This document shows, piece after piece, positions 2,203 to 54,476 of a stretch of 64,000 nt of DNA. Numbering within the stretch: position 1 is the first letter of the stretch; each line of letters begins with the position of its first letter. The notes under the pieces were generated by a model. That model ran no database searches. It was not told the DNA's origin and saw only the letters and a list, made by a program, of their open reading frames with translations. Source of the DNA: Octopus sinensis (Eukaryota); the NCBI RefSeq assembly GCF_006345805.1, contig NC_042998.1, forward strand, positions 199,082,001-199,146,000. Reading direction: 5' to 3'. The position numbers and the translations under genes were made by a program.

Positions 2203-2424
2203 CTGGCAGAAACCTTAGCACGCTGGGTGAAATGCGTAGCCGTATTTCGTCTGCCGTTACGTTCTGAGTTCAAATTCCGCCCAGGTCGACTTTGCTTTTC
2301 ATCCTTTCAGGGTCGATTAAATAAGTACCAGTTACGCACTGGGATCGATATAATCGACTTAATCCGTTTGTCTGTGCTTGTTTGTCCTCTCTGTGTTTAG
2401 CCCCTTATGGGTAGTAAAGAAATA
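2203..2424 (+). mobile_element. SINE family A (tRNA-derived), monomer
   Basis: Box A-like TGGCAGAAA, box B GAGTTCAAATTCC, 3' tail ...GGGTAGTAAAGAAATA; TSD aggtatactgg (2196-2206, 2424-2434). Confidence 0.9.
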
Positions 2425-3571
2425 GGTATACTGGGATATCCCTTTACACTGGTTTATTGGTTTAAATTATGGTCTATCACATTAAACCATGCTATCTTGG
2501 TCTCATTTTTTGCTCAGACATACTTGACTATCGTGTTATATTGTGGTATGCTGGGTTATCCACGTAGACTGCTGTATATTCTATTCATATTTTATTCTCT
2601 AATATGCTCGTCTATCCCTTTATACTTTGGTATATTTTCTATCACTTTAGACTATGTTATATAATTTTATGATCTTAGACTGTGATACACTGGTCAATCA
2701 CAATATACTCTCCCTTTGCTGATCTCTCCCTTTATCCTGTGTTACATTTGTATATTAATACTGAGTTATACAGGTCAATCACTTCAGACTTGTGTATACT
2801 GTCTGTCACTTTAGGTTTGTTATACTGGCATATAATAATTTTAGATTTTGATAAACCTTAAATTGTTGTATACAGGTTTGCCACACTTAGCATATTTTTC
2901 CAGTACTGTTGGTTCGCAGGTGTGTCGCGATACTTTCAAGCAAGACATAAATTACTCCTTTGTATCACATTTTGCTCAGTTTTCGATATAGATTAGAAAA
3001 GCTTGGCAGACACTGCCTTAGGACGTCGTATACCAGTCTAGTACTTTAAACTGTATTGTAAGAGGATATCGCTTTAAGCTATGGTATATTTTCTTGTCCT
3101 GAGAAATTGAGAAACACATTTACTGCATCCTGGGGTGGGGCTTCAGCTCGGGAGTTCAGGAGTGTATGACGTTACTCCTTTATCATCACTACACCCAGAT
3201 CAGTTCTAGCTTGGAGTGGTAGGACCTGTCTAGGATCCAAGTCATCAGCCAAATGTAGAAGATGGTCTTGTGGTCAAAGCACACAGGACTCAGAAGAGGG
3301 CTACCTCTAAACATGTGCCTGACATGGTAGACATACTCTAATGCCAAGTGAAGCTCGGGAATTCAGAAAACTAGTAAACTAACAGAAAGCAACGGGAAAC
3401 ATTGCTGCATCTTTACCAAGAAAGATCATGACAGACATTGATTTGGAGATCCATGAAACATGCAAAACATATAGAGAAAACATAGAGAGAAATATACTAA
3501 ATTACCATCATGGTCTTTCACTTTAGATAGTATTATATTAGTCTACCGTTTTAGTGTGGTATATTGTTCTG

Positions 3572-5924: not shown

Positions 5925-6110
5925 CATCGTGTTGCATCGTCTGAAGCCAGCTTTCTGCCAGTTCTTTCATTCCATACTGATACCAGTTCTTTTCCTTTGA
6001 GGTGAGGAACTCCTTCACTGAAGTTTCCACCTCCTCTTGGTTGATGAAACGTCACGAGCCATGGAGGTGAGCCATGGGTCGGAACTAGTAATAATCCGAG
6101 GGAGATATTT
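5925..6110 (-). mobile_element. mariner transposase 3' fragment
   Basis: Reverse complement aligns to 6455-6650 (EEVETSVKEFLTSKEKNWYQCGMKELAESWLQTMQH). Confidence 0.75.
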
Positions 6111-6139
6111 TTCTGCAATTCTACCGTGCATAAGCAATG

Positions 6140-6660
6140 TTTAATCAAGGAACCCCTTGCCAAACATGCGGGTTTCGAATACAAAGTGAAGCTCTGCATT
6201 TGGTGAAATTATGGGAGAATAATTCACTATGAGGTCGTCCCGGGCGGTCGAACCATCGATGCCAATTTGCCCTCTGGACAGCTAGAGCTGATATGTGCCA
6301 CTGTGCAGCAAATATGCTCGGCATTGGTTAACAGAAAGTGAGCTCTTCTGCAGAAAGACAATGCAAGATCTCATATAACTCGAACGACCCGGAATAAACA
6401 CCATGAATTTGTGGGAATTGAACTGATACCACATGTAGCAGTAAATCCGAATCTTGCTCCCTCGGATTATTACGCGTTCCGATCCATGGCTCACTTCCTA
6501 CGCTCGCCACGCTTCATTAATCAAAAGGAGTCGGAAGCTTCAGTGAAGGAATTCCTCGCCTCGAAGACCCAGAACTGGTGTCGACGTGGAACCAAAGAAC
6601 TGGTAGAAAAGTGGCTTCAAACGGTGCAACGCGACAGCCGCCTCTACTTTCACTGCTAGG
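6140..6660 (+). pseudogene. mariner (DD34D-type) transposase C-terminal relic
   Basis: Motifs LLQKDNARSH and ELIPHVAVNPNLAPSDYYAFRSM (cf. HDNARPH, LPHPPYSPDLAPSDY). Confidence 0.85.
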
Positions 6661-11140: not shown

Positions 11141-11205
<65 letters not shown>

Positions 11206-11210
11206 GGATG

Positions 11211-11288
<78 letters not shown>

Positions 11289-11313
11289 AACATAGATAGA
11301 TAGACAGACAGAC

Positions 11314-11355
<42 letters not shown>

Positions 11356-11370
11356 TTAGATAGATAGATA
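11141..11370. repeat. (GATA)n microsatellite on the 3' flank of the Tx1 element
   Basis: Direct reading. Confidence 0.97.
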
Positions 11371-11673
11371 ACTTTCTTTTATTAGCCACACAGGGCTGAA
11401 TACAGAGGGGACAAATACAAATGCAGAGCTTTTCTTTTCGAGGGTGGAAAAAAATAAAAAATGTAAGATTGCGATCAAAAGGGATCGAGAGGAGGAAAAA
11501 AAAGGAAAAAAAAGGAAAATCGTGTATCACAGAAATAATGGTGTAAACATTGATATAACAAGATTGGGTTCATCCGTGGGAAGAAAAGCCTACAGAAAAG
11601 ACCACGGGAACCCCAGTCAGGGAGGAAAAAAAACATGAGGTCAAAAATGCTCTCTTTCTTTCTTTTTTACGAT

Positions 11674-13533
11674 CTACAGGATCATGCTCAAAATGGTTTC
11701 GTTACTAGCACGCACCATCTTTGCAACATTCACCCATCTTTTTTTTAATCTTTCGCGAGACAAAACTTCCCTCTCCATTCTCACCTTCCTTTTCAAGTGG
11801 TACTTGAAAAAGTTGATGAGCGATTGGCCAGAGAGGTAAGTGTTTGTCTCTAATCCTTTCGCTCGAGTCCACCACACACATTCTTTCACCATGGCCACCA
11901 GTACGATGAAAACTGCCTTGCCTTCCCGGTTGAGGGAAGGGGGCGGAGCAATTCTCACGATAGACTCGGCCGATAGGCGGATTCGTCCCACACGTGACAG
12001 CAGCCGTTCGGCATAAGCCCACAGGTCGGAAATGGTTGGACATTGCACGAGTGCGTGCAGAACGGTTTCGTCGCTCTGACCGCATCTCGGGCAAGTCGGT
12101 CCAGTGTGTCTGGAACCGTGTCTGTAGAGCTTATCCCGAACAGGTAATGCTTCTCGATAGCACTGCCAGGCCAGGGATCTTTGGTGATTGTTCATAGGTC
12201 CCGGCCCGAAAGTTGTCCTGAACAGGCGGGTCAGGTGTTCCTCGTCGACGCCCAGACTCTGCCCGAGTTCGTCGTCGCACCTCCCCTCCACTAATCCTCT
12301 ATAGAATGCCTTTGTTGTGATGGAGTCGCACAAGTTCGATCCCGGACGGCAGAGTTGCTTGAGAGCAACGCGACACTCGCGGTGCCATTCGCCTAGCCTC
12401 GGTCTCTGCTTGATCCATGACTGTAGTTCGTCCAAGGAGACGAGCTGCGGGAAAGCGCGCCGCACAAAAGGCGACCACCCCTGTTCACCGTTGTCTATGA
12501 AGCGCCGGAGATGTCGCAGTCTCAGCGCATGTCTGCGCATCATCAACCACGGCATGCCCAGCCCTCCATTTAGCGGGTGTTGGCAGCAAATGGATCGTCT
12601 AACCATCGGAACGTTTCCCTTCCACAAGAAGCGGAAGAGTATGCGTTCCAGTTTGGTGATGGTAGGGTCGGGACAAGGCACGACGGTCAGACGATACTCG
12701 ATGACGGATACGATGTACGCGTTCGCCACCTCCGCCCGACCTTTTAGGGATAGCTTTCTCTCAGTCCATTTCTGGGTGAGAGTAGCCACCCTAGTCGTTA
12801 TCTCGCCCCAGTTCTTCTCCATTTGGAGGTCCGGACCGAACCAGACCCCGAGCAATTTAACCGGTCCGTCCGTCCAGCGTCCCACGATGGAGACGCTGTT
12901 GGACGGCATGGGCTTGCTTCTCCAGGTGCCGAGCCGCAAGCCCACTGACTTTTCCCGGTTAATTTTTGCTCCCGTTACCGCTTCGTATTCTTTCAGTGTC
13001 TCGCCGACCAGCTCGATGTGCTCGTAGCTCGACACTATGACGGTGACGTCATCCGCGTATGCAGACACGCTCCTCCCGCATCCCAGCTCTCGTGGGATGC
13101 CCCTCAGCGTCGCCAGTTTCCGCAGTAGTGGCTCAAGAGTCAGTACATACAGCAGCGATGAGAGGGGGCATCCCTGACGAACCGAACGCATGATGTTAAA
13201 AGGTCTGGATAGATGACCATTTACGCGAACTACTGAGCGGATGCCGCTGTATAAGGCAGCGATCCAACCGCGGAAAACTGGACCGAAACCAGCCGCTTTG
13301 AGGACAGCCTCCAAGTAGTGATGGTCTACCCTATCGAAGGCTTTTGATTGATCCAAATTGATCAGCGCCCCCCCCATGCCAGGATTTTTAACTACCCTGT
13401 CTATGATGTAGCGCATCAGATGGAGGTTGTCATGAATACTTCTACCCGGCACGGCGCATGTTTGCGCCTTGTCGATTAGTTTCTTGATGACAAGCGCCAA
13501 CCTCTCGGCTAACACCTTGGCCAAAATTTTCAA
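11674..13533 (-). CDS. Tx1 ORF2, uninterrupted reverse transcriptase and C-terminal zinc-finger portion
   Basis: LINLDQSKAFDRVDH, SVRQGCPLSSLLY, AYADDVT, CPRCGQSDETVLHALVQC. Confidence 0.93.
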   Translation of the reverse strand: MKILAKVLAERLALVIKKLIDKAQTCAVPGRSIHDNLHLMRYIIDRVVKNPGMGGALINLDQSKAFDRVDHHYLEAVLKAAGFGPVFRGWIAALYSGIRSVVRVNGHLSRPFNIMRSVRQGCPLSSLLYVLTLEPLLRKLATLRGIPRELGCGRSVSAYADDVTVIVSSYEHIELVGETLKEYEAVTGAKINREKSVGLRLGTWRSKPMPSNSVSIVGRWTDGPVKLLGVWFGPDLQMEKNWGEITTRVATLTQKWTERKLSLKGRAEVANAYIVSVIEYRLTVVPCPDPTITKLERILFRFLWKGNVPMVRRSICCQHPLNGGLGMPWLMMRRHALRLRHLRRFIDNGEQGWSPFVRRAFPQLVSLDELQSWIKQRPRLGEWHRECRVALKQLCRPGSNLCDSITTKAFYRGLVEGRCDDELGQSLGVDEEHLTRLFRTTFGPGPMNNHQRSLAWQCYREALPVRDKLYRHGSRHTGPTCPRCGQSDETVLHALVQCPTISDLWAYAERLLSRVGRIRLSAESIVRIAPPPSLNREGKAVFIVLVAMVKECVWWTRAKGLETNTYLSGQSLINFFKYHLKRKVRMEREVLSRERLKKRWVNVAKMVRASNETILSMIL

Positions 13534-15108
13534 ATCTGCGTTGAGCAGAGTGATGGGCCTGAAATTATCTATGACGTCCCCTTGTTTGGGTCTTTCTTGA
13601 TCAGTGCCACTGCTCCTCGCTTTACAAAAGCAGGAATACTCCCGTTCTGCTGCCAGTTGCAGTAGACAGCTGCCAAGACGCCTCCAAACAAGTCTGGCAT
13701 ATGAAAATAAAATTCGTAGGGCAGACCATCCAAGCCTGGTGACTTGTCTCTCGCGCAGCCTACCATCGCATCCTGTACATCCGCAGCTGTGATAGGCTTT
13801 TCACAAGACTCCACCTCCCTTGCTGAGAGTCGTGGCAAGGCATGCAGGTAGGCACTAAAGTCCACTCTGCTTTCTGACTCACACTTGTCCCAAACAGTTG
13901 GGTGAAGTGTTGTTGAAAAACCCCACACATCCTTTTAGGCTCGAGCAATTCGCGCCCCTGTTCATCTATAAGAGACTTGATGGTGGCTCTGTTGCCTCGT
14001 TGCGTCTCCACCACTCGGGCCTCTTGGGCGGCTCCAACTCCTTCGTTCCTCAGAGCACGCATCCTAGCTCTGACAACGCATCCCTCGTGTTTGGCGTTGA
14101 GGTGTTGGTCGAGGGCCAATCTCGCCGCCAGTACGTTGGACGCGATGCCAGTTCTAAGTGCCTCTTCTAAAACCTTAACTAATTCTCCCTCTATTCTATT
14201 TCGGTCTAATGCTAAGGCTCTACTGTATCTGACTGATTCTGCTTTAATCGCTTTTTTTAGGGCATACCACCATCTGTTGTTGATGATGGTACCCGTCAAA
14301 GCTCTCTTAACTAATGTGCTGATCCGGTCCCTGTAAACCTGTCGTGCTGTAAAAGACGCGTTCAGTTTCCAGTAACCAGGACCCTGCCTATGTGTCTTAT
14401 CTAAGTCAAGTGTACAAGTCACAAACTTGTGATCTGTGTAACTGACTATATGAAATTGTGGACAACCTACACTATTTTTATCTATTGTCCTACAGAATAC
14501 TCTGTAAGTATGATCTGGACGACCCGATGCGGTTACTCCATGTCCACATTGGCACATTCGGGTGGTCCAGTCGGTACCTGTCAGACAGTTGGAAACGTCT
14601 GAGCAGGTCTTTGAGGCATTTGCATCCCCTTCTATTGCTATCTCTGCCCACGTAGTCTAGATGCGTGTCCAGGGTGGCATTCCAATCCCCCACTAAAAGT
14701 AAAGGACGAGACGTTCCCATGAAAGACTCTAGACGTCGAAAGAAATCTGGTCGGCCTGTTAAGGACGGAGCATAAACTGCTATAGTCGAAAAAAGCACAC
14801 TCATTGCTGCCATCGACATCCAAAACGACCAGCCTACCCTCCGGGTCTAGGAAATTTGCTCTTACTTTGAGATCCAGACTCTTCCGGATAAGCACCGCGG
14901 TGCCACCTCCGCCCATTCTCGGTAGACACGGAGAAAAATAAATGTTGAAATGTGTACCGAAAATGTGCTGGAGTGCCCGCAAGCTGTGGAGTCTGGTCTC
15001 ACTGATGGCTATGATATTCAGATTTAGTGACTTGATGTCATTTAACAGGTAGCCTTGTTTCCAAGGCGACCCCAAGCCACGTACATTTATACTACCTATT
15101 CTGAGCAT
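11674..15108 (-). pseudogene. Tx1 ORF2 (APE endonuclease + RT), split by ~4 small frameshifts in this assembly
   Basis: Start MLRIGSINVRGL at 15108; APE motifs IAISET, GDWNA, TDHKFV in successive frames (14638-15108, 14490-14819, 13760-14557, 13569-13928) lead into the RT frame. Confidence 0.88.
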
Positions 15109-15149
15109 GTTCCGATAAAAGTGCAAAAAAGGAAAAGGAGAGAGAAAAG

Positions 15150-17297
15150 GTTACTTGTTTTTCGAAAGTTCTTTGTCTTTCACCTCACGGTCTTCTTCTA
15201 TGAGGCTTTTATACAGTTTTTTCGATGAGTACTTTTGAAATCTCCCTACTGCATCAGGGTAAAGAGATTTCAGGGTGTGCTGTATGTGTTCTGTGTCACG
15301 TGTATTATTTTAATGTGTTGTGGTGGTGTTGTATGTGGTGGTTACTTGTTTTTATGTCGTTTTCAGTAATGTTAGTGTTTGACCTAATGTGTTCCATTAG
15401 GTCGTGGTTGTTTGTGTTTATGGCTGTCAACATTTTTGGGGGGTTTGATGATGGTGTGTTTGTGTTGATGTGTGTGTTTTCTGTGGATTTTTGTTTCGGG
15501 AGTGGTGTATCTTCCCGCTTTGTTTGTTATTTTTTCTTTTCTTTTTTTTTCCCCTTTTTCTTCTCCCCCCTGTGGCTATTTGCCAATCTTCCGTGTCTTC
15601 TTCGTCTAATGACAGATCAGACGAATCGGAGTCTGGAAGAGGGAAAGTATTGGGGTCTATTGTCGACTGTGTTGGTTTTGTTGTTGGTGTTGGTTGGTGA
15701 GCGTTGGTTGTGGTGTATGCGGTTTTGGATGTGGGGTTTGGGTATTTTGTGTTTGAGTGATTGTGGGTATTGTTGTGTGTTTTTAGGGTCTCAATTTTGT
15801 GGGGATTTGGAGTTGTAATTGTTTCTTCATTTTTGCTGGGTGTGTTTTTGGCAGATGTCCTTGGTTTGGGAGTTGGTATATTCTTGGTTGTTGTTGTTGG
15901 TGATGCTGCTTCTGTTCTTGGTGCTGCAGTTGGTTGTGTGGTTGTTGTTTGGTGAGGTTTGTTCCTGCAAAAAGTGGTGTGGGTAGTAAACCTTGTTTAT
16001 TTGTTTGTGTTCCGGCTGCTGTTGTTGTTGCTGTTGTTTTCTTGCGGCAGATTTGCAGTCTTTTTTGAGGTGTTGCTCACTGCCGCATATGTAGCAACGT
16101 GGTCTTCTGCCATCGACGACCACATATAACTTGTGGTCGTCTGATACACATATCTGGGTGGGTATTTTTTTTATATCCTCATGATGTATATGTAGAAGAA
16201 ATTCTATTTTTTGTCCCACCCAGTTTTTATGCTCTGTGACTGTGGTTTCCAAAATAGTATAATTCGCCATTTTTACGCATAAGGCCTTTACAAGCCATAG
16301 ACTATTGGCTATTTTGGGGACATTGTTTAGAGTGATCTTAGTCACTTTCTGTCCCCGATAGCTTGGTGTAAGTTGGAGTTCATCTGAGTGAAGAGTTAGC
16401 GTTGAGAAATGTCTAGCTAACTCTTCGGTGTAGAAAACAACTTGTATGTGGGCAAATTTGTTCCACCAGGTTACATATTCTTTGTGATCCCAGATGGGTT
16501 TCAAGCACTTCTCTATTTTGCTTGTGTTGGCCTTCTCTGGGATTTTTGTTTTTTTGTTAACTATTTTATAAATGATTGTTCGTCTTTTTTCATTTTCCAA
16601 AATATCTTCTGGTATGTTTATTTTTACTATACCTTCTGATTCTGTTATTTTGATGTTCGTGTCCTGTATTTGTTGAGCCGTAAAGTATATTGTTGTTTTT
16701 TTTTCTTTAATCGCCTCAGCGAAATTTGTTGTTGTTTTGTTATTGTTGTTGCTTGTGGTGATGTTGTTGTTGGCTGCAGTTTGTAAAATTGGTGTGTTTG
16801 GTTCGATCGTGCTAGTAGGAAGGGGTGGAAAATTGCCTGCGTACTTTAGTCCTGCACTAGGGCAAAATTCGACATTTCGTTTGCTTGTCGTCGTTATTTT
16901 TTCACTTGTTGGTGATGGAGTGAGCAGTGGTTGAAGGGAATTGTTGTTGTCGTCGTTGTTGTTGTTGTTATTGTCGTTCTTGGTGACGGCGGTGGTGTTG
17001 GTAGTATTAGTAGCATTGACGGCACGGTCTTTGGTGGCGGTGATGGTGATTGTGTTATTGGTGGCGATATTTAGTAGGGATAGCAGTTTTAGTAGCAGAT
17101 TCTGCCATGGTGTTGGTGGTGGTGGTGGACTCACTGATGGTGTTGACGGTGCTTGGCCTTGCGACCTTTGTTTTGTATTTGTTGCTGTTGGTGGTGGTGG
17201 AGTTGTCAGGTTCGGCGTATGCTAACAGAGCATCCTGTTTTTCTGTTTCTGCGTCACGCTTCACTTGCAACTCAGCCTCGTGGTGGCCAGTGGCCAT
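15150..17297 (-). pseudogene. Tx1 ORF1 (gag-like nucleic-acid-binding protein), frameshifted
   Basis: Start MATGHHEA at 17297; main frame 15827-17134 carries CYICGSEQHLKKDC (CX2CX4HX4C, 16055-16096); C-terminus ...EVKDKELSKNK* ends ~40 nt before the ORF2 ATG. Confidence 0.8.
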
Positions 17298-17515
17298 TTT
17301 GGAAATAAAATGGCTAAATGAAACCACGAAGGCTATGAGAATTTTTTCTTTTAAATTTTGCCCACAAGGGGCAAAATTTTGTGTCGATATTTATCAAAGG
17401 TTTACAGTGGATGTTGTTGCACAACTTTTAAGCACAAAATGTTTGTCAATATACACTTTTAAATGGTCAAAATAAATGATTACCTTCGGAGCTGAAACGA
17501 CATCACATCCGTCAG

Positions 17516-17850
<335 letters not shown>

Positions 17851-18205: not shown

Positions 18206-18408
18206 ATTTCTTTATTCTCCACAGGGGGCTAAACATAGAGGGGGCAAACAAAGGGATTAAGTCGATAAGATCGACCCCAGTGCGTAATCGACTCTGAAAG
18301 GATGAAAGGCAAAGTCGACGTCGGTGGAATTTGAACTCACAACGTAACGGCAGACGAAATACCTATTCCTCACTACCCACAAGGGGCTAAGCATAGAGAG
18401 GACGAACA
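18206..18408 (-). mobile_element. SINE-A, partial tandem units
   Basis: Contains the junction cggcagacgaaatacctatt. Confidence 0.8.
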
Positions 18409-18460
18409 TGTGATTAGGGGGCAAGCTTCTTACCACGCAGCCACTCCTGCGCCTATTATA

Positions 18461-23616: not shown

Positions 23617-23619
23617 TAT

Positions 23620-23844
23620 ATTTCTTTACTACCCACAAGGGGCTAAACACAGAGGGGACAAACAAGGACAGACACACGGATTAAGTCGATTACATCGACC
23701 CAGTGCGTAACTGGTACTTATCGTCCCCGAAAGGATGAAAGGCAAAGTCGACCTCAGCGGAATTTGAACTCAGAACGTAACGGCAGACGAAATACGGCTA
23801 CGCATTTCGCCCGGCGTGCTAACGTTTCTGCCAGCTCGCCACCT
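23620..23844 (-). mobile_element. SINE-A monomer
   Basis: Full head to tail. Confidence 0.9.
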
Positions 23845-24686
23845 TATGTTTATAATTTACTGAACTGAACAATTTACTGAACTGTCAACCTCACTTCTTT
23901 TTCTGGTTTTTATTATCAGGTACATATAAATTAATCGAATGTTTGGAGGGGAATGTGTACCCATTTGACGTATTTTGAAAGGTGATTCTAGTTTTTTGAA
24001 GCTTACCTTTTATAAGTCCGTTAAAAATTTTTCAGGATTTTGTTTCCTTGGGAAGGAAACAATTGTTTATTTTTGGACGGAATTTGTTCTCTATACATGT
24101 ACCTCTTCCATTTGTTGTAAAAATATATCAAATAGCTTCAAATGGATGACTGCTTTAAATGAACCGAAAATACAAACTGGGAAACGGAAAAAAACATTTT
24201 ATTATGTATTCATTGAAAAAACATTACTATACCACCCGAAAAATGTATACGAAGTGACTGATACAAAAAAAGCGAAAGTGTAATAATAAGAATAACATGG
24301 TAAGTATGCTTTGTTGACAAAGGCTGACGTGTTTACAAACAACAAATTCGACTTCCAGACAAATAGATCACCTCACAGATCGAGACCATCACATGCACAC
24401 ACACGCACGTGCACACACACACATGTATAATATGTGTGCGTGTATACATACACAATCCTGCAAATCACATGCACACACATCAGACATCCGAATAATCTGA
24501 TCTTTTGAAGAAAACAGGAAATTGTGAGTGTGTTTGTGTGTATGACAGTGTGAGTGTGTTTGTGAGTGTTTGTGTGTGTGTGTGTGTGTGTGTGGATGCA
24601 TGCATATGCATGCATCCTGGCAACCTTGAATGTGCAGCAAAATAACTTATAAACAGATATGCGTACACATGCACGCTTCACAAGCA

Positions 24687-24834: not shown

Positions 24835-25451
24835 CACATATATATATTTCCACAGATAAATATATCGTTTTATTTTTGTAAATACAACAGATGTGTGTGT
24901 GTGTGTGTGTGTGTCTGTGTCTGTGTGTATGTGTGTGTGTGTGTATATCTGTGTGTGAGTGTGTGTGTGAACCACATACAGCTTCCGAGAAATGTCAACC
25001 AATCCACTATAGTATTTCACGTTACGATGCAAACCAGTGCTGTCGTAATTTTCCAGAAATACTCACTTTCGGCAAACAAATTACAAAAAAAAGGAAACAA
25101 AGTGAAGCAGATGACGAAATACTAAGACATCAGACGATGTTGTCATTCTTGACATTATTCTCGTCGTTGTTGACCACATCATTGCCGTCGTTGTGGTTGA
25201 CGCCGTTGTTATATTTAGTTTATTGCGTGTATTTTTATAATGGTAGTGGAACTTCATTTCCGTTGTTGTTCTTGTTGTTGCGGTTGTTGTTAGTGATTTT
25301 GGCGACGGTTATTGATGTTGTTGTTTGGAAGATTTGTAAGGTCCTCGAAAAAAAAACCTGCTTTGCAGTATTTGTTCTGAGTTTTAAATCATTCCAGGTT
25401 CGATTAAATAAAGCATTAATCAGGTGCTGGATTAGATACTAGATTATTAGA

Positions 25452-26607
25452 AGGTGGCGAGCTGGCAGAAACGTTAGCACGCCGGGCGAAATGCTTTGCG
25501 GCATTTCGTCTGCCGTTACGTTCTGAGTTCAAATTCCGCCGAGGTCGACTTTGCCTTTCATCCTTTCGGGGTCGATAGAATAAGTACCAGTTACGCACTG
25601 GGGTCGATATAATCGGCTTAATCCGTCTGTCTGTCCTTGTTTGTCTCCTCTGTGTTTAGCCCCTTGTGGGTAGTAAAGAAATAGGTATTTCGTCTGCCGT
25701 TACGTTCTGAGTTCAAATTCCGCCGAGGTCGACTTTGCCTTTCATCCTTTCGGGGTCGATTAAATAAGTACCAGTTACGCACTGGGGTCGATATAATCGG
25801 CTTAATCCGTCTGTCTGTCCTTGTTTGTCTCCTCTGTGTTTAGCCCCTTGTGGGTAGTAAAGAAATAGGTATTTCGTCTGCCGTTACGTTCTGAGTTCAA
25901 ATTCCGCCGAGGTCGACTTTGCCTTTCATCCTTTCGGGGTCGATTAAATAAGTACCAGTTACGCACTGGGGTCGATATAATCGGCTTAATCCGTCTGTCT
26001 GTCTTGTTTGTCTCCTCTGTGTTTAGCCCCTTGTGGTAGTAAAGAATAGGTATTTCGTCTGCCGTTACGTTCTGAGTTCAAATTCCGCGAGGTCGACTTT
26101 GCCTTTCATCATCCTTTCGGGGTCGATAAATTAAGTACCAGTTACGCACTGGGGTCGATATAATCGCTTAATCCGTCTGTCTGTCCTTGTTTGTCCTCTC
26201 TGTGTTTAGCCCCTTGTGGTAGTAAAGAAATAGGTATTTCGTCTGCTGTTACGTTCTGAGTTCAAATTCCGCCGAGGTCGACTTTGCCTTTCATCCTTTC
26301 GGGGTCGATAAATAAGTACCAGTTACGCACTGGGGTCGATATAATCGGCTTAATCCGTCTGTCTGTCCTTGTTTGTCTCCTCTGTGTTTAGCCCCTTGTG
26401 GGTAGTAAAGAAATAGGTATTTCGTCTGCCGTTACGTTCTGAGTTCAAATTCCGCCGAGGTCGACTTTGCCTTTCATCCTTTCGGGGTCGATTAAATAAG
26501 TACCAGTTACGCACTGGGTTCGATATAACCGACATAATCCGTTTGTCTGTCTGTCCTTGTTTGTCCTCTCTGTGTTTAGCCCCTTGCGGGTACTAAAGAA
26601 ATAGGTG
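25452..26607 (+). mobile_element. SINE-A array: one head plus six ~184-bp body units
   Basis: Units joined at aaagaaatag|gtatttcgtctg; flanked by 18-bp aggtgctggattagatac (25422-25439, 26603-26620). Confidence 0.92.
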
Positions 26608-36779: not shown

Positions 36780-37221
36780 ATAGTATGTTAATTTCAAATG
36801 TTGGCTCAAGGCCAGCAACTTCGGAAGAGGCGGGGTAAGTCGATTACATCGGCCCCAGTACTCATCTGGTATTTATTTTATCGACCCCGAAAGGATGAAA
36901 AGTAAAGCCGATTTCGGCGGAATTTGAACTCAGAACATGAAGACGAGCGAAATGCCGCTGAGCATTACGCCCTGCATGCTAACGTTTCTTATTTCTTTAT
37001 TGCCCACAAGGAGCTAAACATAGAGGGGAACAAACAAGGACAGACAAAGGGATTAAGTCGATTACATCGACCCCAGTGCGTTTCTGGTACTTAATTTATC
37101 GACCCCGAAAGGATGAAAAACAAAGTTGACCTCGGCGGAATTTGAACTCAGAGCGTAACGGCAGACGAAATACGGCTATGCATTTCGCCTGGCGTGCTAA
37201 CGGTTCTGCCAGCTCGCCGCC
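36780..37221 (-). mobile_element. Two adjacent SINE-A copies (older alternative-tail copy 36780-36990; monomer 36991-37221)
   Basis: Both have A head/body; tails differ. Confidence 0.8.
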
Positions 37222-37231
37222 TACTCGGGTC

Positions 37232-37487: not shown

Positions 37488-37892
37488 TCGACTACGATGC
37501 GATCTCCACACGTCGTTTTACTTGTCAGGTGAAATTTTAACACCAATTTGTTAGCAACCAATCAGTAACCAGTAATGTGTATATTGCCTGACATTCCCAA
37601 CTGGCAGCTTATTCATTCTCCACGTTTTCAGCAACTCTTAGAACTCACTACATTGGTGACACCGGCGTAATAAAAGTATATAGCGGTTCTAATGCATCTG
37701 GGATATTTATTGGTTATTTATATCATCTGTGATGAATTAAATAACAATGTTGTTTGATGCCTCAATCACGTGTTGTCATTAATGATTGACCTAATCGTTT
37801 CTGTGAAAATTTGCATGATAATAAACTATTATTTATTACACAATATTCCTGGTGTCTAAATTAATGAACTCTTTGCTGGTATGAACGTCAGA

Positions 37893-38470
37893 TGCTTGGC
37901 GGTATTTCGTCTGCTGTTACGTTCAAATTCTTCCGAGGTCGACTTTGCTTTTCATCCTTTCGGGGTCGATAAATTAAGTACCAGTTACGCACTGGGGTCG
38001 ATGTAATCGACTTAATACCTATGTCTGTCCTTGTTTGTCCCTTCTATGTTTAGCCCCTTGTGGGTAGTAAAGAAATAGGTATGAACGTCAGATGCTTTGC
38101 GGTATTTCGTCTGCCGTTACGTTCTGAGTTCAAATTCCGCCGAAGTAGACTTTGTCGTTCATCCTTTCGGGGTCGATAAATTAAGTACCAGTTACGCACT
38201 GGGGGTTCGATGTAATCAACTTAATCCGTTTGTCTGTCCTTATTTGTCTCCTCTGTGTTTAGCCCCTTGTGGGTAGTAAAGAAATAGGTATTTCGTCTGC
38301 CGTTACGTTCTGAGTTCAAATTCCGCCGAGGTCGACTTTGCCTTTCATCCTTTCGGGGTCGATTAAATAAGTACCAGTTACATACTGGGGTCGATGCAAT
38401 CGACTTAATCCGTTTGTCTGTCCTTGTTTGTCCCCTCTGTGTTTAGCTCCTTGTGGGTAATAAAGAAATA
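37893..38470 (+). mobile_element. SINE-A cluster of three head-less units
   Basis: Triple direct repeat ggtatgaacgtcaga at 37878, 38078 and 38471. Confidence 0.88.
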
Positions 38471-38653
38471 GGTATGAACGTCAGAAAGTATTTATAGAAC
38501 TGGATTGCTGATAAATCGGTGACATTTAGGTTGAAGACATAACATTTCAACCATCATGTAAGGTTTTGGAACAAGATCGCATTGTAGTCTAGTCGCTACA
38601 ATAGTTATGACAAAATAAAGCTGAACCATGTGTTATACCGTAGCAATCTGAAA

Positions 38654-39770: not shown

Positions 39771-40004
39771 TAAGGCGGCGAGCTGGCAGAAACGTTAGCG
39801 CGCCGGGCGAAATGCGTAGCCGTATTTCGTCTGCCGTTACGTTCTGAGTTCAAATTCTGCCGAGGTCGACTTTGCCTTTCATCCTTTCGGGATCGATAAA
39901 TTAAGTACCAGTTTCGCACTGAGGTCGATGTAATCGACTTAATCCCTTTGTCTGTCCTTGTTTGTCCTCTCTGTGTTTAGCCCCTTGTGGGTAATAAAGA
40001 AATA
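39771..40004 (+). mobile_element. SINE-A monomer flanked by a ~150-bp duplication
   Basis: Flanks 39611-39769 and 40016-40157. Confidence 0.88.
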
Positions 40005-40350
40005 GGTATAAATACTTTGCGATAGTTGTTCTGATATTTTATGTTCTAAGTTCAACTTTGCTCTTGATACCACCCGATCCAATGAAATCAAGTACGAAAA
40101 AAGTACGGGTAAATAATAATAATATAATGCCACACAAGTACTATACGTGTACAGGGGTCGATGCTCCCGACTCGTTCCTCTCCTCAAAACTGTAGGGTTT
40201 TTGTATCTGGTCGCTTTGTGTTGTTGCGTACTTTAACGACACAGTCATACGCCGCACTACGTAGCTTGGCTACGTGCAAGAGTTCCATTTGTTTTCCGTT
40301 ACACAGACAATGGCCTATGTAATTGTCAAGTCCTGCTATGATCTATATGT

Positions 40351-41436: not shown

Positions 41437-41457
41437 AGCTACTTCATCATCACTACC

Positions 41458-41688
41458 TATTTCTTTACTACCCACAAGGGGCTGAACACAGAGAGGACAA
41501 ACAAGGACAGACAAACGGATTAAGTCGATTACATCGACCCCAGTGCGTAACTGGTACTTAATTTATCGATCCCGAAAGGATGAAAGGCAAAGTCGACCTC
41601 GGCGGAATTTGAACTCAGAACCTAGCGGCAGACGAAATACTGCTAAGCATTTCGCCCGGCGTGCTAACGTTTCTGCCAGCTCACCGCC
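41458..41688 (-). mobile_element. SINE-A monomer
   Basis: TSD cttcatcatcactacc (41442-41457, 41688-41703). Confidence 0.9.
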
Positions 41689-41703
41689 TTCATCATCACT
41701 ACC

Positions 41704-43310: not shown

Positions 43311-43573
43311 TGAAATGCTTAGCGGTATTTCGTCTGTTTTTAGGTTCTGAATTCAAATTCCGCCAAGGTCGACTTCGCCTTTCATCCTTTCGGGGTCGAT
43401 AAATTAAGTACCAGTTACGCACTGGGGTCGATATAATCGACTTAATACCTATGTCTGTCCTTGTTTGTCCCCTCTATGTTTAGCTCCTTGTGGGTAATAA
43501 AGAAATAGGTATTTCGTCTGTTTTTAGGTTCTGAATTCAAATTCCGCCGAGGTCGACTTCGCCTTTCATCCTT
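43311..43573 (+). mobile_element. SINE-A, 1.3 units
   Basis: 66-bp internal duplication with shared private variants. Confidence 0.85.
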
Positions 43574-46826: not shown

Positions 46827-47242
46827 CCTCCTCCCCTTCTTTCCTGAGCGTCAATAATACTTTAATTGTTCCACGTCCTGCGTTTGCTGTTTTTTTTTCT
46901 CTTTTTTTCTGTGTTTTCTTGTTTGGATTAACTATTATAATATTATATATATATATATATTATATAATATATATATATATATACATATGCACATATACGT
47001 ATATACATACACGTATGTATCTGTACATATCTATATGTCAGAACGCGTATAGATGAATTAGTTTCTATATTACTATAGGCGCACGTGTAATTGTGAATCT
47101 AAATATATAACAGCCTACACATCAGTATATATATGTAAATGTATATACATGCATACACACACATATATAGAGAGAGAGACCATGAGGGGTTTAGTTCAGA
47201 TCTAAACGAATATGGTCTTCCGTTACGTTACAATAACATAGA

Positions 47243-47617
47243 GGAGACGAATAAGGACAAAGAGATTAAGTCGAATATATCGACTCCAGTGCGTAACTGG
47301 TACTTAATATATCGACCCCGAAAGGATGAAAGGCAAAGTCTACCTCGGCGGAATTTGAACTCAGAATGTAACGGCAGACGAAATACCTATTTCTTTACTA
47401 CCCACAAAGGGCTAAACACAGAGAGGACAAACAAAGACAGACACACTGATTAAGTCGATTATATCGACTCCAGTGCGTAACTGGTACTTATTTAATCGAC
47501 CCCGAAAAGATGAAAGGCAAAGTCGACCTCGGTGGAATTTGAACTCAGAACGTAGCGGCAGACGAAATATCGCTAAGCATTTTGCCCGGCATGCTAACGA
47601 TTCTGCCAGCTCACCGC
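47243..47617 (-). mobile_element. SINE-A dimer
   Basis: Junction cggcagacgaaatacctatttctttactaccc. Confidence 0.85.
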
Positions 47618-49290: not shown

Positions 49291-50128
49291 CCCCATCATG
49301 ACTATAAGCACCAGTCCCCTAACTTTGGCCCTGCTCTATTGTCTGGGAGTCCGGCAAAGAGCTTGACCAGAACATACACAAATGCATCCGCAAACACACA
49401 CGCCCTAGCACGGTAGACACCTTCCAATATATTCTCCCCCACATGTACCCCTACATACACCGCATGCATACATAAATGCCCCAAGAATTTAACCAAAACA
49501 TAAAGGAAAGAAAATATACTACCCCTCAATTTGCAACAAAACCACCCCCAGAGACGACGCTTTTGATACCAAAGAACATAAGTCTTAACTTAATCCCCTG
49601 CTCGATTCGGTTCATCATCCTTTCTACAGCAAACACAAACCGGATGTGTCTATTCACCTCCAACAGTAGAGAACAGCCGCCATATTTCATTCCATAACAA
49701 CTACCTCTGAAGAGAGTAGAGTTACATAATCGGACTGTTACCTGGCACTCCATTGAACCCCTAATGCGAAACCTACCGGTAAGATCGCCTGTAATGGATA
49801 TATAATACTGTACACATCAATTAATACATATATATTGTATACTTTATGTCGTAATAATTAATAACATATTTTTTTAATATTCTATTAATATTTATTTAAT
49901 ATAATAAACACTTCTATAGGAATTAATCTTATTTTATAATACTTGAAGAATTATTATATTCAACTACATATACAACCACTGAGGATCTCACTGGGTAATT
50001 AAAAGATAAAAATTACAGAAAAGACAATGAAATATCTTTAGTCATTATAATAAACTCTGATATAAGAATTAACCTTATTATATAATAATTGAAAAGTTGT
50101 TATAATTAATAATAATAATATATATATA

Positions 50129-50395
50129 TTTCTTTATTGCCCACAATGGCTAAACATAGAGGGGACAAACAAGGACAGACAAAGGTATTAAGTCGATTAC
50201 ATCGACCCCAGTGCGAAACTGGTACTTTATTTATCGACCCCGAAAGGATGAAAGGGCGCAGGAGTGGCTGTGTGGTAAGAAACTTGCTTTCCAACCTCAT
50301 GATTCCGGGTTCAGTCACACTGCGTGGCACCTTGGACAATTGTCTTCTTCTATAAGCCTCGGGCCGACCAAAGCCTAGTGAGTGGTTTTGGTAGG
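50129..50395. mobile_element. SINE-A 3' half (minus) fused to a SINE-B 5' half (plus)
   Basis: Junction gaaaggatgaaag|ggcgcaggagtgg at ~50255. Confidence 0.8.
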
Positions 50396-50667: not shown

Positions 50668-51078
50668 ATGAGCTGGCAGAAACGTTAGCAGGCCGGGCGA
50701 AATGCATAGCTGTATTTCGTCAGTCGTTACGTTCTAAGTTCTAATTCCACCGAGGTCGACTTTGCCTTTCATCCTTTCGGGGTCGATGAATTAAGTGCCA
50801 GTTACGCACTGGGGTCGATATAATCGACTTAACCCCTTTGTCTGTCCTTGTTTGCCCCCTCTGTGTGTAGCCCCTTGTGGGTAGTAAAGAAATAGGTATT
50901 TCGTCTGTCGTTACGTTCTGAGTTCAAATTCCGCCGAGGTCGACTTTGCCTTTCATCCTTTCGGGGTCGATTAAATAAGTACCAGTTGCACACTGGGGTC
51001 GATACAATCGACTTAATCTCTTTGTCTGTCCTTGTTTGTCCGCTCTGTGTTTAGCCCCTTGTGGGCAATAAAGAAATA
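50668..51078 (+). mobile_element. SINE-A dimer
   Basis: Junction aaagaaataggtatttcg at ~50895. Confidence 0.9.
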
Positions 51079-53642: not shown

Positions 53643-54179
53643 TCTTCACTTAAAGCATATCGAAATTCAAACAATACAACCATTTATTCACCATGTGTCT
53701 CGATGTTCTTCTTTGACTCTTCAGCATTCCGATTACTCTGCCGAGCGTAATGCTTACTGATTCACATTGTTCTGAATAAGTCATGTGTATCGCCTTGTAG
53801 TTTTTAAGATTTTGATGATGTGATTGTACAGTTTTAGAGTGACATTGCAAGGTGGGTGTAAGAGGTCTGATCTGGTCAGTTTGAACACAAAACAGATAGA
53901 ATGTTTAGGCCTGACGTAGCAGCTCTGAAAGCAAACGCGTTAACCCGAGATCATCTCTGATCGAACATCGGTTTCATTAATGGCCTTCCAAACCTTTCCC
54001 GTCTTTTCGTTTCGCGTATTTTGTATTTTGAAATACATTATCCAACATAGCTCTTTTGATATTTGTTATCAGCTACACTCTAAAGTTTGATTTAACTGTT
54101 ATTTCTAGCATGTTGAACAACCGTATAGAGGTTTCTTCGTGTCTTGTGGTTGATGTTGGTATTATTGTCGCTACCACCA

Positions 54180-54410
54180 GGCGGCGAGCTGGCAGAAACG
54201 TTAGCACGCCGGGCGAAATGCTTAGCATTATTTCGTCTGCCGCTACGTTCTGAGTTCAAATTCCGCCGAGGTCGACTTTGCCTTTCATCATTTCGGGGTC
54301 GATAAATTAAGTACCAGTTACGCACTGAGGTTGATATAATCGAGTTAATCTCTTTGTTTGTCCTTGTTTGTCCCCTCTATGTTTAGCCCCTTGTGGGTAG
54401 TAAAGAAATA
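54180..54410 (+). mobile_element. SINE-A monomer
   Basis: 24-bp TSD ggtattattgt(c/t)gctaccaccagg (54158-54181, 54411-54434). Confidence 0.92.
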
Positions 54411-54476
54411 GGTATTATTGTTGCTACCACCAGGTCAGCCTTAATTGAACAAACTTTTCTTTGTACAAAGATCAAA

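What the first reader, a model, noticed from the sequence alone, without database searches (positions are those of the whole stretch)
11371..11420. Tx1 LINE 3' end matches the 3' tail of SINE-A (candidate SINE-LINE partner pair)
LINE plus-strand tttcttttattagccacacagggctgaatacagaggggacaaa aligns with SINE-A tttctttattgcccacaaggggctaaacacagaggggacaaa (compare 50129, 36991, 23621), about 36 of 43 positions by eye. Both form a terminal stem-loop in sense orientation: LINE AGCC-CTGTGT-GGCT and SINE GCCC-CTTGT-GGGC/GGGT, followed by AATAAA(A)GAAA. Established: shared 3' tails identify the LINE whose RT mobilises a SINE, but this is typical of CR1/L2/RTE partners and is rare for L1/Tx1-clade elements. 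Inference: one of the most abundant SINEs here is driven by this Tx1 family or a close sibling.
Basis: partly seen in the sequence, partly recalled or inferred. Interest (0 to 1): 0.8.

Follow-up and report, generated by a model that had tools for sequence, protein, structure and literature searches.

The report
SINE and LINE share one 3' hairpin
In this octopus-like DNA, an abundant short repeat (SINE-A) ends in the same small hairpin-plus-AATAAAGAAA tail as a 6-kb L1/Tx1-type LINE, and relatives of that LINE elsewhere carry the tail too, so the SINE most likely borrows this LINE lineage's copying machinery.

Summary
The last 43 nt of the minus-strand LINE (window 11373-11415) match SINE-A tails at 81-84% identity (36/43). 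This is the only part of the 6.1-kb LINE that matches anything else in the window. Local alignment scores 27, against 10 +/- 1.3 for shuffles.

The tail belongs to the LINE and is not a stray SINE piece. Five 3' ends from relatives end in the same hairpin plus AATAAA(A)GAAAT: L003, L014, L015, and two in Argonauta hians (ORF2 64-75% identical).

L015 matches a SINE-A tail at 32/35. Two of the three differences are one compensatory stem pair (G-C to C-G). In Argonauta, local SINE tails match the local LINE tail at 41/43, so the tails co-vary by lineage. A second SINE family in the window has a different tail.

Best reading: a stringent-type SINE/LINE partner pair, driven by this LINE lineage, probably a sibling family rather than this broken copy.

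The L1 group is supported: APE+RT+zf-RVT, closest solved structure human L1 ORF2p. "Tx1" itself could not be tested and is only circumstantially supported by (TATC)n on both flanks and an ORF1 CCHC knuckle. Mobilisation is inferred, not shown.

This is a new member of a known kind, in a LINE group where shared tails are rare.

The parts
11373..11415 (-). Shared 3' tail of the LINE, homologous to the SINE-A tail: TTTGTCCCCTCTGTATTCAGCCCTGTGTGGCTAATAAAAGAAA
   Evidence: blastn 81-84% over 43 nt; the only LINE segment matching elsewhere in the window. 36/42 to the SINE-A consensus. Score 27 against shuffles 10 +/- 1.3.
11384..11397 (-). Terminal stem-loop of the LINE, AGCC-CTGTGT-GGCT. Predicted to extend into a lower stem, TCT/AGA and TATT/AATA.
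   Evidence: Sequence. MFE fold -7.4 kcal/mol with the extended stem, z -1.4. A homologous stem is kept in 18 LINE and SINE tails.
11371..11673 (-). LINE 3' UTR, about 300 nt from the ORF2 stop to the tail
   Evidence: ORF2 stop at 11674-11676. Alignment with the 3' UTRs of relatives shows shared blocks.
11371..17515 (-). Whole LINE, about 6.1 kb and degenerate: ORF1 and ORF2 are split into several frames
   Evidence: ORF list. Bounded by microsatellites.
11674..13533 (-). ORF2 C-terminal piece: reverse transcriptase plus zinc-binding zf-RVT domain (619 aa)
   Evidence: Pfam RVT_1 1.9e-26 and zf-RVT 4.2e-8. Closest solved structures are human L1 ORF2p at 1e-26, against R2 at 1e-12. Relatives are 64-75% identical.
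14638..15126 (-). ORF2 N-terminal piece: apurinic-type endonuclease (APE)
   Evidence: Pfam Exo_endo_phos 2.1e-6.
15827..17134 (-). ORF1 with one CCHC zinc knuckle (CYICGSEQHLKKDC). No match to the L1 ORF1 (Transposase_22) family.
   Evidence: Pfam zf-CCHC E 0.0014, below the curated cut-off. The same motif is in L014 ORF1.
11141..11370 (.). (TATC)n microsatellite directly after the LINE 3' end
   Evidence: TRF period 4, 57.5 copies.
17516..17849 (.). (TATC)n microsatellite directly before the LINE 5' end, with the same unit and orientation as the 3' one
   Evidence: TRF period 4, 84 copies. Sequence.
23619..23845 (-). SINE-A, full-length copy whose tail matches the consensus exactly
   Evidence: blastn 93%. 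Tail.
25443..26606 (+). SINE-A: one full copy followed by five 184-bp head-less units in tandem, each ending in the tail
36990..37225 (-). SINE-A copy with the GGGCAATAAAGAAATA tail variant
50127..50255 (-).
50670..51078 (+). SINE-A copy plus one tandem unit. The tail at 51033-51077 is the copy closest to the L015 LINE tail (32/35).
54179..54416 (+). SINE-A copy with a clear 21-bp target-site duplication, GGTATTATTGTYGCTACCACC
2203..2429 (+). SINE-A copy, 5'-truncated, with target-site duplication GGTATA
37892..38475 (+). SINE-A tandem array of three units, with target-site duplication GGTATGAACGTCAG
39772..40009 (+). SINE-A copy
41454..41691 (-). SINE-A copy with target-site duplication GGTAGTGATGAT
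43312..43573 (+). SINE-A, 5'-truncated copy plus a partial tandem unit
47235..47615 (-). SINE-A copy plus a partial tandem unit
18206..18455 (-). Composite: 35 nt of SINE-B head, then a tail module, then a SINE-A unit with tail

Best explanation
SINE-A and an L1-group LINE lineage, probably its Tx1 branch, form a stringent-type SINE/LINE partner pair. The LINE at 11371-17515 is a dead member of that lineage.

**The shared module.** It is the last ~35-45 nt of both RNAs. It consists of a T/C-rich lead-in (TCTGTGTTT), a 4-bp GC stem with a CTTGT loop, and the trailer AATAAA(A)GAAAT.

**Proposed mechanism (inferred).**
- The LINE ORF2 protein (endonuclease plus reverse transcriptase) binds this 3' hairpin on its own RNA.
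- It nicks the target and starts target-primed reverse transcription at the RNA 3' end.
- SINE-A RNA carries a copy of the hairpin, so the same protein picks it up in trans.

**Which family drives it.** Most likely an intact sibling, either L015-like or one carrying the SINE-type GCCC/GGGY stem, rather than the frameshifted window copy.

**Shown:** the shared terminal sequence; that it is native to the LINE lineage; stem conservation with one compensatory change; lineage-specific co-variation of SINE and LINE tails; target-site duplications on SINE-A.

**Inferred:** protein-hairpin recognition and actual trans-mobilisation.
For: 1. Only the terminal 43 nt of the LINE match anything else in the window, and what they match is SINE-A tails, end to end.
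2. The tail is native to the LINE. Relatives with 64-75% identical ORF2 carry it at the end of alignable 3' UTRs:
   - L003: GGCC-CTTGT-GGCCAATAAAAGAAATC(ATT)n
   - L014: GGCC-CTAGT-GGCCAATAAATGAAATC(ATT)n
   - L015: GGCC-CTTGT-GGCCAATAAAGAAAC
   - Argonauta L002a and L002b
3. L015 matches the SINE-A copy at 51033-51077 at 32/35. Two of the three differences are the two sides of stem pair 2.
4. The Argonauta locus holds five SINE-like tails matching the Argonauta LINE tail at up to 41/43. Two of those SINEs are body homologues of SINE-A.
5. Stem counts on 18 tails: 94% of cells paired; pair 2 is GC:10 and CG:6; 0 of 500 shuffles reach this; slid controls give 10-49% paired. RNAalifold predicts the same stem independently.
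6. SINE-A behaves as a retroposon. It has about 30 units covering ~8% of the window and 14-21-bp target-site duplications.
7. The other abundant SINE (SINE-B) has a different tail, so the tail is not a generic genomic motif.
8. The general model of shared tails and stringent recognition is established: PMC3747384, and PMC4176376 for L2.
Against: - The window LINE's own stem (AGCC/GGCT, 6-nt loop) differs from the SINE-A stem (GCCC/GGGY, 5-nt loop). Overall identity is only ~85%, so this exact copy or family is probably not the source.
- The stem has only 4 bp. All six C-G cells are SINE-A copies, so they count as one evolutionary event.
- Folding energies of the tails are not clearly better than shuffles (z -0.8 to -1.6, and +0.2 for L003).
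- No other LINE families of this genome (RTE, CR1, Dong-R4) could be compared.
- The sources of L003, L007, L014 and L015 are metagenome contigs of unknown host.
- There are no functional data.
Confidence: 0.75

Rival explanations
1. Locus artefact. The 43 nt at 11373-11415 would be a SINE-A remnant that happens to abut the LINE, or was picked up by this one copy, and would not be part of the LINE family.
For: Only one copy of the LINE is in the window. SINE-A is dense here, covering ~8% of the window.
Against: Five other 3' ends of related LINEs, from at least three sources including Argonauta hians, end in the homologous hairpin and trailer at the end of alignable 3' UTRs. No SINE-A body sequence precedes the tail in the window LINE.
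Confidence: 0.03
2. SINE-A is really driven by a LINE of a different clade (RTE, CR1, Dong-R4 and others are abundant in octopus), one that carries a closer copy of the tail. The similarity to this L1-type lineage would then be secondary, for example through tail exchange between LINEs.
For: The window LINE is only ~85% identical to the SINE-A tail. Other octopus LINE families could not be examined: no other LINE ORF is in the window, and both metagenome scans failed.
Against: Sibling L015 reaches 32/35, and two of the three differences are compensatory. SINE and LINE tails co-vary between octopus and Argonauta within this lineage. A structurally similar GGCC-TTGT-GCC/GACC motif also appears near the 3' ends of more distant (46% identical) relatives L006 and L012.
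Confidence: 0.1
3. The shared tail is a historical relic. SINE-A took the tail from this lineage long ago but is now mobilised without hairpin recognition, by a relaxed-type enzyme, or is no longer mobile and spreads by tandem or segmental duplication.
For: Many SINE-A units are in tandem arrays rather than dispersed. Thermodynamic support for the hairpin is weak.
Against: Dispersed copies have individual target-site duplications. The tail is among the best-conserved parts of SINE-A copies, and the stem is kept by a compensatory change. The array junctions sit exactly at the tail end, which points to reverse-transcriptase activity rather than unequal crossing-over alone.
Confidence: 0.1
4. The LINE is not a Tx1-clade element but another L1-group lineage, for example an L1-like lineage with a type I ORF1. 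The pair would then be an L1-tail pair, not a Tx1 one.
For: No Tx1 reference could be compared. Pfam and PDB only place it in the L1 group. Database names were uninformative.
Against: - Octopus repeat annotations list L1-Tx1 as the L1-group LINE class: 13 recently active families in O. vulgaris (PMC13282606), also PMC8967140.
- The copy sits inside a (TATC)n microsatellite, and three relatives are followed by (ATT)n. Microsatellite targeting is a Tx1-clade habit (PMC4494074).
- ORF1 has a CCHC knuckle and no L1 ORF1 domain.
Confidence: 0.25

Closest known systems
Stringent-type SINE/LINE pairs with a common 3' tail (Ohshima/Okada model), e.g. eel UnaSINE1/UnaL2 and zebrafish ZfL2 stem-loop recognition
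   Same: The extreme 3' ends of the SINE and LINE are homologous. The shared part contains a short conserved stem-loop. The rest of the SINE is unrelated to the LINE. The literature shows the LINE protein binding the stem-loop in the L2 cases (PMC4176376, PMC3747384).
   Different: Those tested systems are L2-clade. Here the LINE is L1-group. The stem is only 4 bp, and no binding or mobilisation has been tested.
L1-clade pairs: maize ZmSINE2/ZmSINE3 with LINE1-1_ZM, and Chlamydomonas SINEX-3_CR with L1-1_CR
   Same: An L1-group LINE with a conserved 3' hairpin shared with SINEs, with compensatory changes in the stem (PMC3472496, PMC3747384).
   Different: Those are plants and algae and end in poly(A). 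This one is an animal (cephalopod) lineage whose copies end in (ATT)n or (TATC)n, not poly(A).
Crocodilian SINEU mobilised by Tx1-Mar (Kojima 2015, PMC4494074)
   Same: A SINE assigned to a Tx1-clade partner. Tx1 elements there target specific sequences, including microsatellites. 5' ends are extended by added RNA pieces.
   Different: That pairing rests on shared target preference and shared snRNA-derived 5' heads, and SINEU has poly(A) tails. Here the link is a shared structured 3' tail, and SINE-A does not share the LINE's microsatellite context.
Microsatellite-specific Tx1-clade LINEs: Kibi (TC)n, Koshi (TTC)n, crocodilian (TTCC)n/(TTTC)n families
   Same: The window LINE is flanked on both sides by the same microsatellite. 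Relatives are followed by long (ATT)n.
   Different: The repeat units are different, (TATC)n and (ATT)n. Specificity rests on one two-sided case plus three 3' flanks, so it is not established.

Membership tests
Stringent-type SINE/LINE partner pair (shared 3' tail) | SINE and LINE share sequence at their extreme 3' ends and not elsewhere | tested here: met
   Only LINE positions 6101-6143 of 6145 match SINE-A, at the SINE's last 43 nt. Score 27 against shuffles 10 +/- 1.3.
Stringent-type SINE/LINE partner pair (shared 3' tail) | The tail is a constant feature of the LINE family, not of one locus | tested here: met
   L003, L014, L015, L002a and L002b all end in the homologous hairpin plus trailer.
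Stringent-type SINE/LINE partner pair (shared 3' tail) | Conserved terminal stem-loop supported by compensatory changes | tested here: met
   94% of cells paired; pair 2 GC:10 and CG:6; pair 1 GU/GC/AU; 0 of 500 shuffles; slid controls below 50%. RNAalifold gives the same stem. Caveat: 4 bp and one independent double change.
Stringent-type SINE/LINE partner pair (shared 3' tail) | SINE and LINE tails evolve together within a host lineage | tested here: met
   Argonauta SINE tails match the Argonauta LINE tail at 41/43. Octopus SINE-A matches octopus-type LINE tails at 30-32/35 and 36/42.
Stringent-type SINE/LINE partner pair (shared 3' tail) | The LINE protein mobilises the SINE in trans through the tail | not testable with these tools
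   Needs a retrotransposition assay or RNA-binding assay.
Tx1 clade of non-LTR retrotransposons | RT domain groups with Tx1 references in a phylogeny | not testable with these tools
   No Tx1 reference sequence could be obtained. Cluster names were uninformative. Only L1-group affinity is shown: human L1 ORF2p 1e-26 against R2 1e-12.
Tx1 clade of non-LTR retrotransposons | ORF2 with an N-terminal APE endonuclease and an RT | tested here: met
   Exo_endo_phos, RVT_1 and zf-RVT. The intact relative L014 has the same three domains.
Tx1 clade of non-LTR retrotransposons | Sequence-specific insertion (genes, transposons or microsatellites) | tested here: inconclusive
   The window copy lies between two (TATC)n blocks. 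L003, L014 and L015 are followed by (ATT)n. There are too few two-sided cases.
tRNA-derived SINE | Short, non-coding, high-copy, dispersed, with target-site duplications | tested here: met
   A ~240-bp unit, about 30 units in 64 kb. Target-site duplications of 14-21 bp on at least 5 copies.
tRNA-derived SINE | tRNA-like head with Pol III A and B boxes | tested here: inconclusive
   A B-box-like GAGTTCAAATTCC is present. ARAGORN and Rfam find no tRNA in the window or in a SINE-A copy.

The most novel reading that the evidence does not exclude
An L1/Tx1-group LINE lineage shared by octopuses and argonauts uses structure-specific (stringent) recognition of a tiny 3' hairpin. It would then be the engine behind at least one of the very large octopod SINE expansions, with several unrelated SINE bodies in Argonauta riding the same tail. 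Its reverse transcriptase would also prime and re-prime on short terminal homology. That would explain three things at once: the target sites beginning GGTAT or TAT, the head-less 184-bp SINE-A tandem arrays that start at an internal GGTAT, and the SINE-type hairpin found in the LINE's 5' leader.
Probability: 0.35. Interest if true: 0.65.

Novelty: new member of a known kind. Interest (0 to 1): 0.5.

Why it matters
SINEs are the largest repeat class in Octopus genomes, about 12% of O. vulgaris, and nearly all recently active SINE families there are still "unclassified" (PMC13282606). Naming the LINE lineage that supplies the machinery for an abundant octopod SINE would give that expansion a mechanism and a testable partner.

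It would also add an animal example to the very short list of L1-group LINEs that recognise a specific 3' structure rather than a poly(A) tail: 3 of 58 known pairs, all plant or algal (PMC3472496). That bears on whether stringent recognition is ancestral in the L1 group.

Tried and rejected
1. **More LINE copies from metagenome contigs.** The protein-pattern scan found no relative. The DNA-pattern scan GGCCCTTGTGGCYAATAAA gave 4 chance hits, three in GC-rich contigs (56-64% GC, L008/L010/L011) and one at 41% GC (L009), none resembling the LINE or SINE tail context. That collection appears to hold no octopod DNA, although P0001-P0007 all contain the scanned peptides.
2. **Testing "Tx1" through database names.** The representative search gave 36,769 hits without names. 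Two cluster look-ups returned only "hypothetical protein", "exonuclease III" and mislabelled MAG entries. The supplement of the Tx1-Mar paper is not held. Tx1 versus L1 is left open.
3. **tRNA origin of the SINE-A head.** ARAGORN and Rfam found nothing.
4. **Other LINEs in the window as rival partners.** Eight further ORFs of at least 150 aa have no Pfam match.
5. **Homology of the 5' UTRs of the window and Argonauta LINEs.** Local alignment is not above shuffles, 12 against 9.9 +/- 1.4, with 52 of 500 shuffles as good. So I cannot say whether the 5' hairpin is an original LINE feature.
6. **Thermodynamic support for the hairpin.** z-scores are weak. I rely on conservation and covariation instead.
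7. **Incomplete or unclear 3' ends.** L001 and L005 stop before the 3' end. L007 has a variant end, CTTGTGGCCAATCAACACAC. In L013 the 3' end could not be located.

Full report
**1. What is at the coordinates**

The window looks like octopod DNA. The closest named protein relative is from Argonauta hians.

On the minus strand, 11371-17515 is a ~6.1-kb non-LTR retrotransposon. Its parts are:
- ORF1 at 15827-17134, with one CCHC knuckle.
- An APE endonuclease piece at 14638-15126.
- A 619-aa RT plus zf-RVT piece at 11674-13533 (Pfam).
- A ~300-nt 3' UTR.

ORF2 and ORF1 are each split over several frames, so this copy is dead. Among solved structures the RT is closest to human L1 ORF2p (1e-26) and far from R2 (1e-12).

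The element ends ...TTTGTCCCCTCTGTATTCAGCCCTGTGTGGCTAATAAAAGAAAGT. It is flanked on both sides by the same microsatellite in the same orientation: (TATC)n at 11141-11370 and at 17516-17849.

**2.

blastn of the whole LINE against the window finds nothing except its last 43 nt (window 11373-11415).

A local alignment of the SINE tail to the LINE scores 27. For 200 shuffled LINEs the mean is 10.0, sd 1.3, maximum 16. The hit is at the extreme 3' end of both elements.

SINE-A is a ~240-bp unit: GGCGGCGAGCTGGCAGAAACG...GAGTTCAAATTCCGCCGAGGTCGAC...TTTGTCCCCTCTGTGTTTAGCCCCTTGTGGGTAGTAAAGAAATA. About 30 units cover ~8% of the window. At least five copies have 14-21-bp target-site duplications, so it behaves as a retroposon.

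A tRNA origin of its head could not be confirmed. There is a B-box-like motif only, and ARAGORN and Rfam are negative.

**3. The tail belongs to the LINE lineage**

I fetched DNA around the closest ORF2 relatives, which are 64-75% identical. Their 3' UTRs align with one another and with the window's. They end as follows:

| Source | 3' end |
|---|---|
| L003 | ...GGGCC-CTTGT-GGCCAATAAAAGAAATC(ATT)n |
| L014 (intact 1111-aa ORF2) | ...AGGCC-CTAGT-GGCCAATAAATGAAATC(ATT)n |
| L015 | CCTCTATGTTTAGGCC-CTTGT-GGCCAATAAAGAAACGATTATTAC |
| Argonauta L002a | CAGCC-AGGT-GGCTAAGAAAGAAAT |
| Argonauta L002b (adjacent 5'-truncated copy) | CGGCC-CTTGT-GGCTAATAAAGAAATCTAT |

The hairpin plus AATAAA(A)GAAAT is therefore the normal 3' end of this lineage, in at least two octopod lineages. 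The "SINE remnant at this locus" reading is rejected.

**4. SINE and LINE tails track each other**

- L015 matches the SINE-A copy at 51033-51077 at 32/35. Two of the three differences are the two sides of one stem pair, G-C in the LINE and C-G in SINE-A.
- The window LINE shares the longer lead-in TTTGTCCCCTCTGT with SINE-A, at 36/42.
- The 12-kb Argonauta locus contains five SINE-like tails, GGCC-CTTGT-GGCY AAYAGAGAAATCTAT.
- These match the Argonauta LINE tail L002b at up to 41/43.
- Two of the five sit on bodies ~70% identical to octopus SINE-A. The other three sit on different bodies.
- By contrast, the window's other abundant SINE (SINE-B, 9 copies) ends ...GACTGAAACAAGTAAAAGAGTAAA and lacks the module.

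This lineage-by-lineage agreement is the strongest argument that the LINE lineage and the SINEs use the same tail for the same purpose.

**5. The stem-loop**

On 18 distinct LINE and SINE tails, the 4-bp stem is paired in 94% of cells:

| Pair | Counts |
|---|---|
| 1 | G-U 8, G-C 7, A-U 1 |
| 2 | G-C 10, C-G 6 |
| 3 | C-G 15, U-G 2 |
| 4 | C-G 18 (invariant) |

No shuffle out of 500 reaches the observed pairing or covariation. Sliding the partner by 1-3 columns gives 10-49% paired. RNAalifold predicts the same stem on its own.

Single-sequence folds add a lower stem, TCT/AGA and TGTT/AATA, in five of six tails.

Limits:
- The stem is short.
- All C-G cells are SINE-A copies, so they represent one event.
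- The window LINE keeps four pairs only in a shifted register with a 6-nt loop.
- Folding z-scores are weak, from -0.8 to -1.6, and +0.2 for L003.

**6. Mechanism**

The best-supported reading is the established stringent model (PMC3747384, and shown biochemically for L2 in PMC4176376). The LINE's ORF2 protein binds the terminal hairpin of its RNA and begins target-primed reverse transcription there. SINE-A RNA presents the same hairpin and is copied in trans.

Shown here: shared terminal module, native to the LINE, stem conservation and covariation, co-variation across hosts, and target-site duplications.

Inferred: binding and mobilisation. The active driver is more likely an intact sibling than the window copy.

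**7. Is it Tx1?**

Supported: L1-group architecture and affinity.

Circumstantial evidence for Tx1:
- Insertion inside a microsatellite, and (ATT)n after three relatives. This is a habit of Tx1-clade families such as Kibi and Koshi (PMC4494074).
- An ORF1 CCHC knuckle without the L1 ORF1 domain.
- Octopus repeat annotations report L1-Tx1 as the L1-group class (PMC13282606, PMC8967140).

I could not obtain a Tx1 reference or informative names. The clade label therefore stays untested.

**8. Comparison with what is known, and novelty**

Shared SINE/LINE tails are a well-known kind. For the L1 group they are rare: 3 of 58 pairs, all in maize or Chlamydomonas (PMC3472496).

The one published Tx1-SINE link I found is SINEU with Tx1-Mar. 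It rests on shared targets and shared 5' heads with poly(A) tails, not on a shared structured tail (PMC4494074).

I found no paper among those searched that names a LINE partner for octopus SINEs. Repbase and Dfam could not be consulted.

I rate it a new member of a known kind, of moderate interest.

**9. What remains open**

- Whether a LINE of another clade matches better genome-wide.
- The Tx1 label.
- The ages of the two partners.
- Any functional test.

Noticed in passing
window 25443-26606, 37892-38475, 50670-51078, 47235-47615, 43312-43573: SINE-A forms head-to-tail arrays of a 184-bp head-less unit. The 5'-most unit always extends further 5' toward the head (complete or nearly so in three arrays, from SINE position ~46-49 in 43312 and 37892). 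Every following unit starts at SINE position 58 (GGTATTTCG), directly after the previous tail ...AAAGAAATA. This fits one of two events: the reverse transcriptase jumping from an internal GGUAU to the 3' end of another SINE RNA, or nested insertion into the internal GGTAT site resolved by homology.
   Followed up: partly
window 54179-54416, 2203-2429, 37892-38475, 41454-41691, 25443-26606: SINE-A target-site duplications begin with GGTAT, GGTAG or GGTGC in five copies. Three other copies are followed by TATA. The LINE tail is followed by TATC repeats, and Argonauta tails by TAT. This suggests a shared TAT-containing target or priming microhomology.
   Followed up: partly
window 17353-17379 (minus strand, in the LINE 5' leader): A perfect 11-bp hairpin, AAATTTTGCCC-CTTGT-GGGCAAAATTT, followed by AAAAGAAAAAA. 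Fold is -13.3 kcal/mol, z -3.6, with 0 of 200 shuffles as good. Its top, GCCCCTTGTGGGCAA, is identical to the SINE-A tail variant. It could be an original 5' UTR feature, or a tail-bearing RNA piece added by template switching. The Argonauta 5' UTR has a weaker GCCC-TCTTT-GGGA at a similar distance from the ORF1 ATG, but the UTRs are not significantly alike.
   Followed up: partly
window 11141-11370 and 17516-17849: The LINE sits between two long (TATC)n blocks of the same phase and orientation. It either inserted into a microsatellite or carries such repeats as its tail. Relatives L003, L014 and L015 are instead followed by (ATT)n.
   Followed up: partly
L012 1-10169 (ENA ERZ26052130 ctg11195c): A 46%-identical relative occurs as a head-to-tail tandem array of whole LINEs with a period of about 7.5 kb. 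Near its unit end there is a GGCC-TTGT-GCC motif reminiscent of the hairpin. L006 has GGGCCTTGTGACC similarly placed.
   Followed up: no
window 32451, 41028, 45153, 50255, 51512, 52500, 61217 (SINE-B heads): A second abundant SINE, with head GGCGCAGGAGTGGCTGTGTGGTAAG, an internal (TA/TG)n stretch, and tail ...GACTGAAACAAGTAAAAGAGTAAA. It shares a central block with SINE-A (GATAGAATAAGTAC...GGGGTCGAT...TCGACT) but has a different tail, so it presumably has a different LINE partner.
   Followed up: partly
window 18362-18455 (minus strand): A chimera: 35 nt of SINE-B head is joined to a SINE-A-type tail module, which runs straight into a SINE-A 184-bp unit. This is another head/tail recombination or template-switch product.
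   Followed up: no
L002 7300-7415 (Argonauta hians): Between the LINE end and the adjacent 5'-truncated LINE 3' UTR copy lies a segment with a B-box-like GGTTCAATCTGAATC. The downstream piece might be a SINE built from a small-RNA head plus the entire LINE 3' UTR. ARAGORN finds no tRNA there.
   Followed up: partly
one search hit P0005; one search hit P0136: Close relatives of this animal LINE protein are deposited as proteins of bacterial MAGs (Herbaspirillum sp., Sedimenticola sp.). This is most likely host-DNA contamination of those bins.
   Followed up: no
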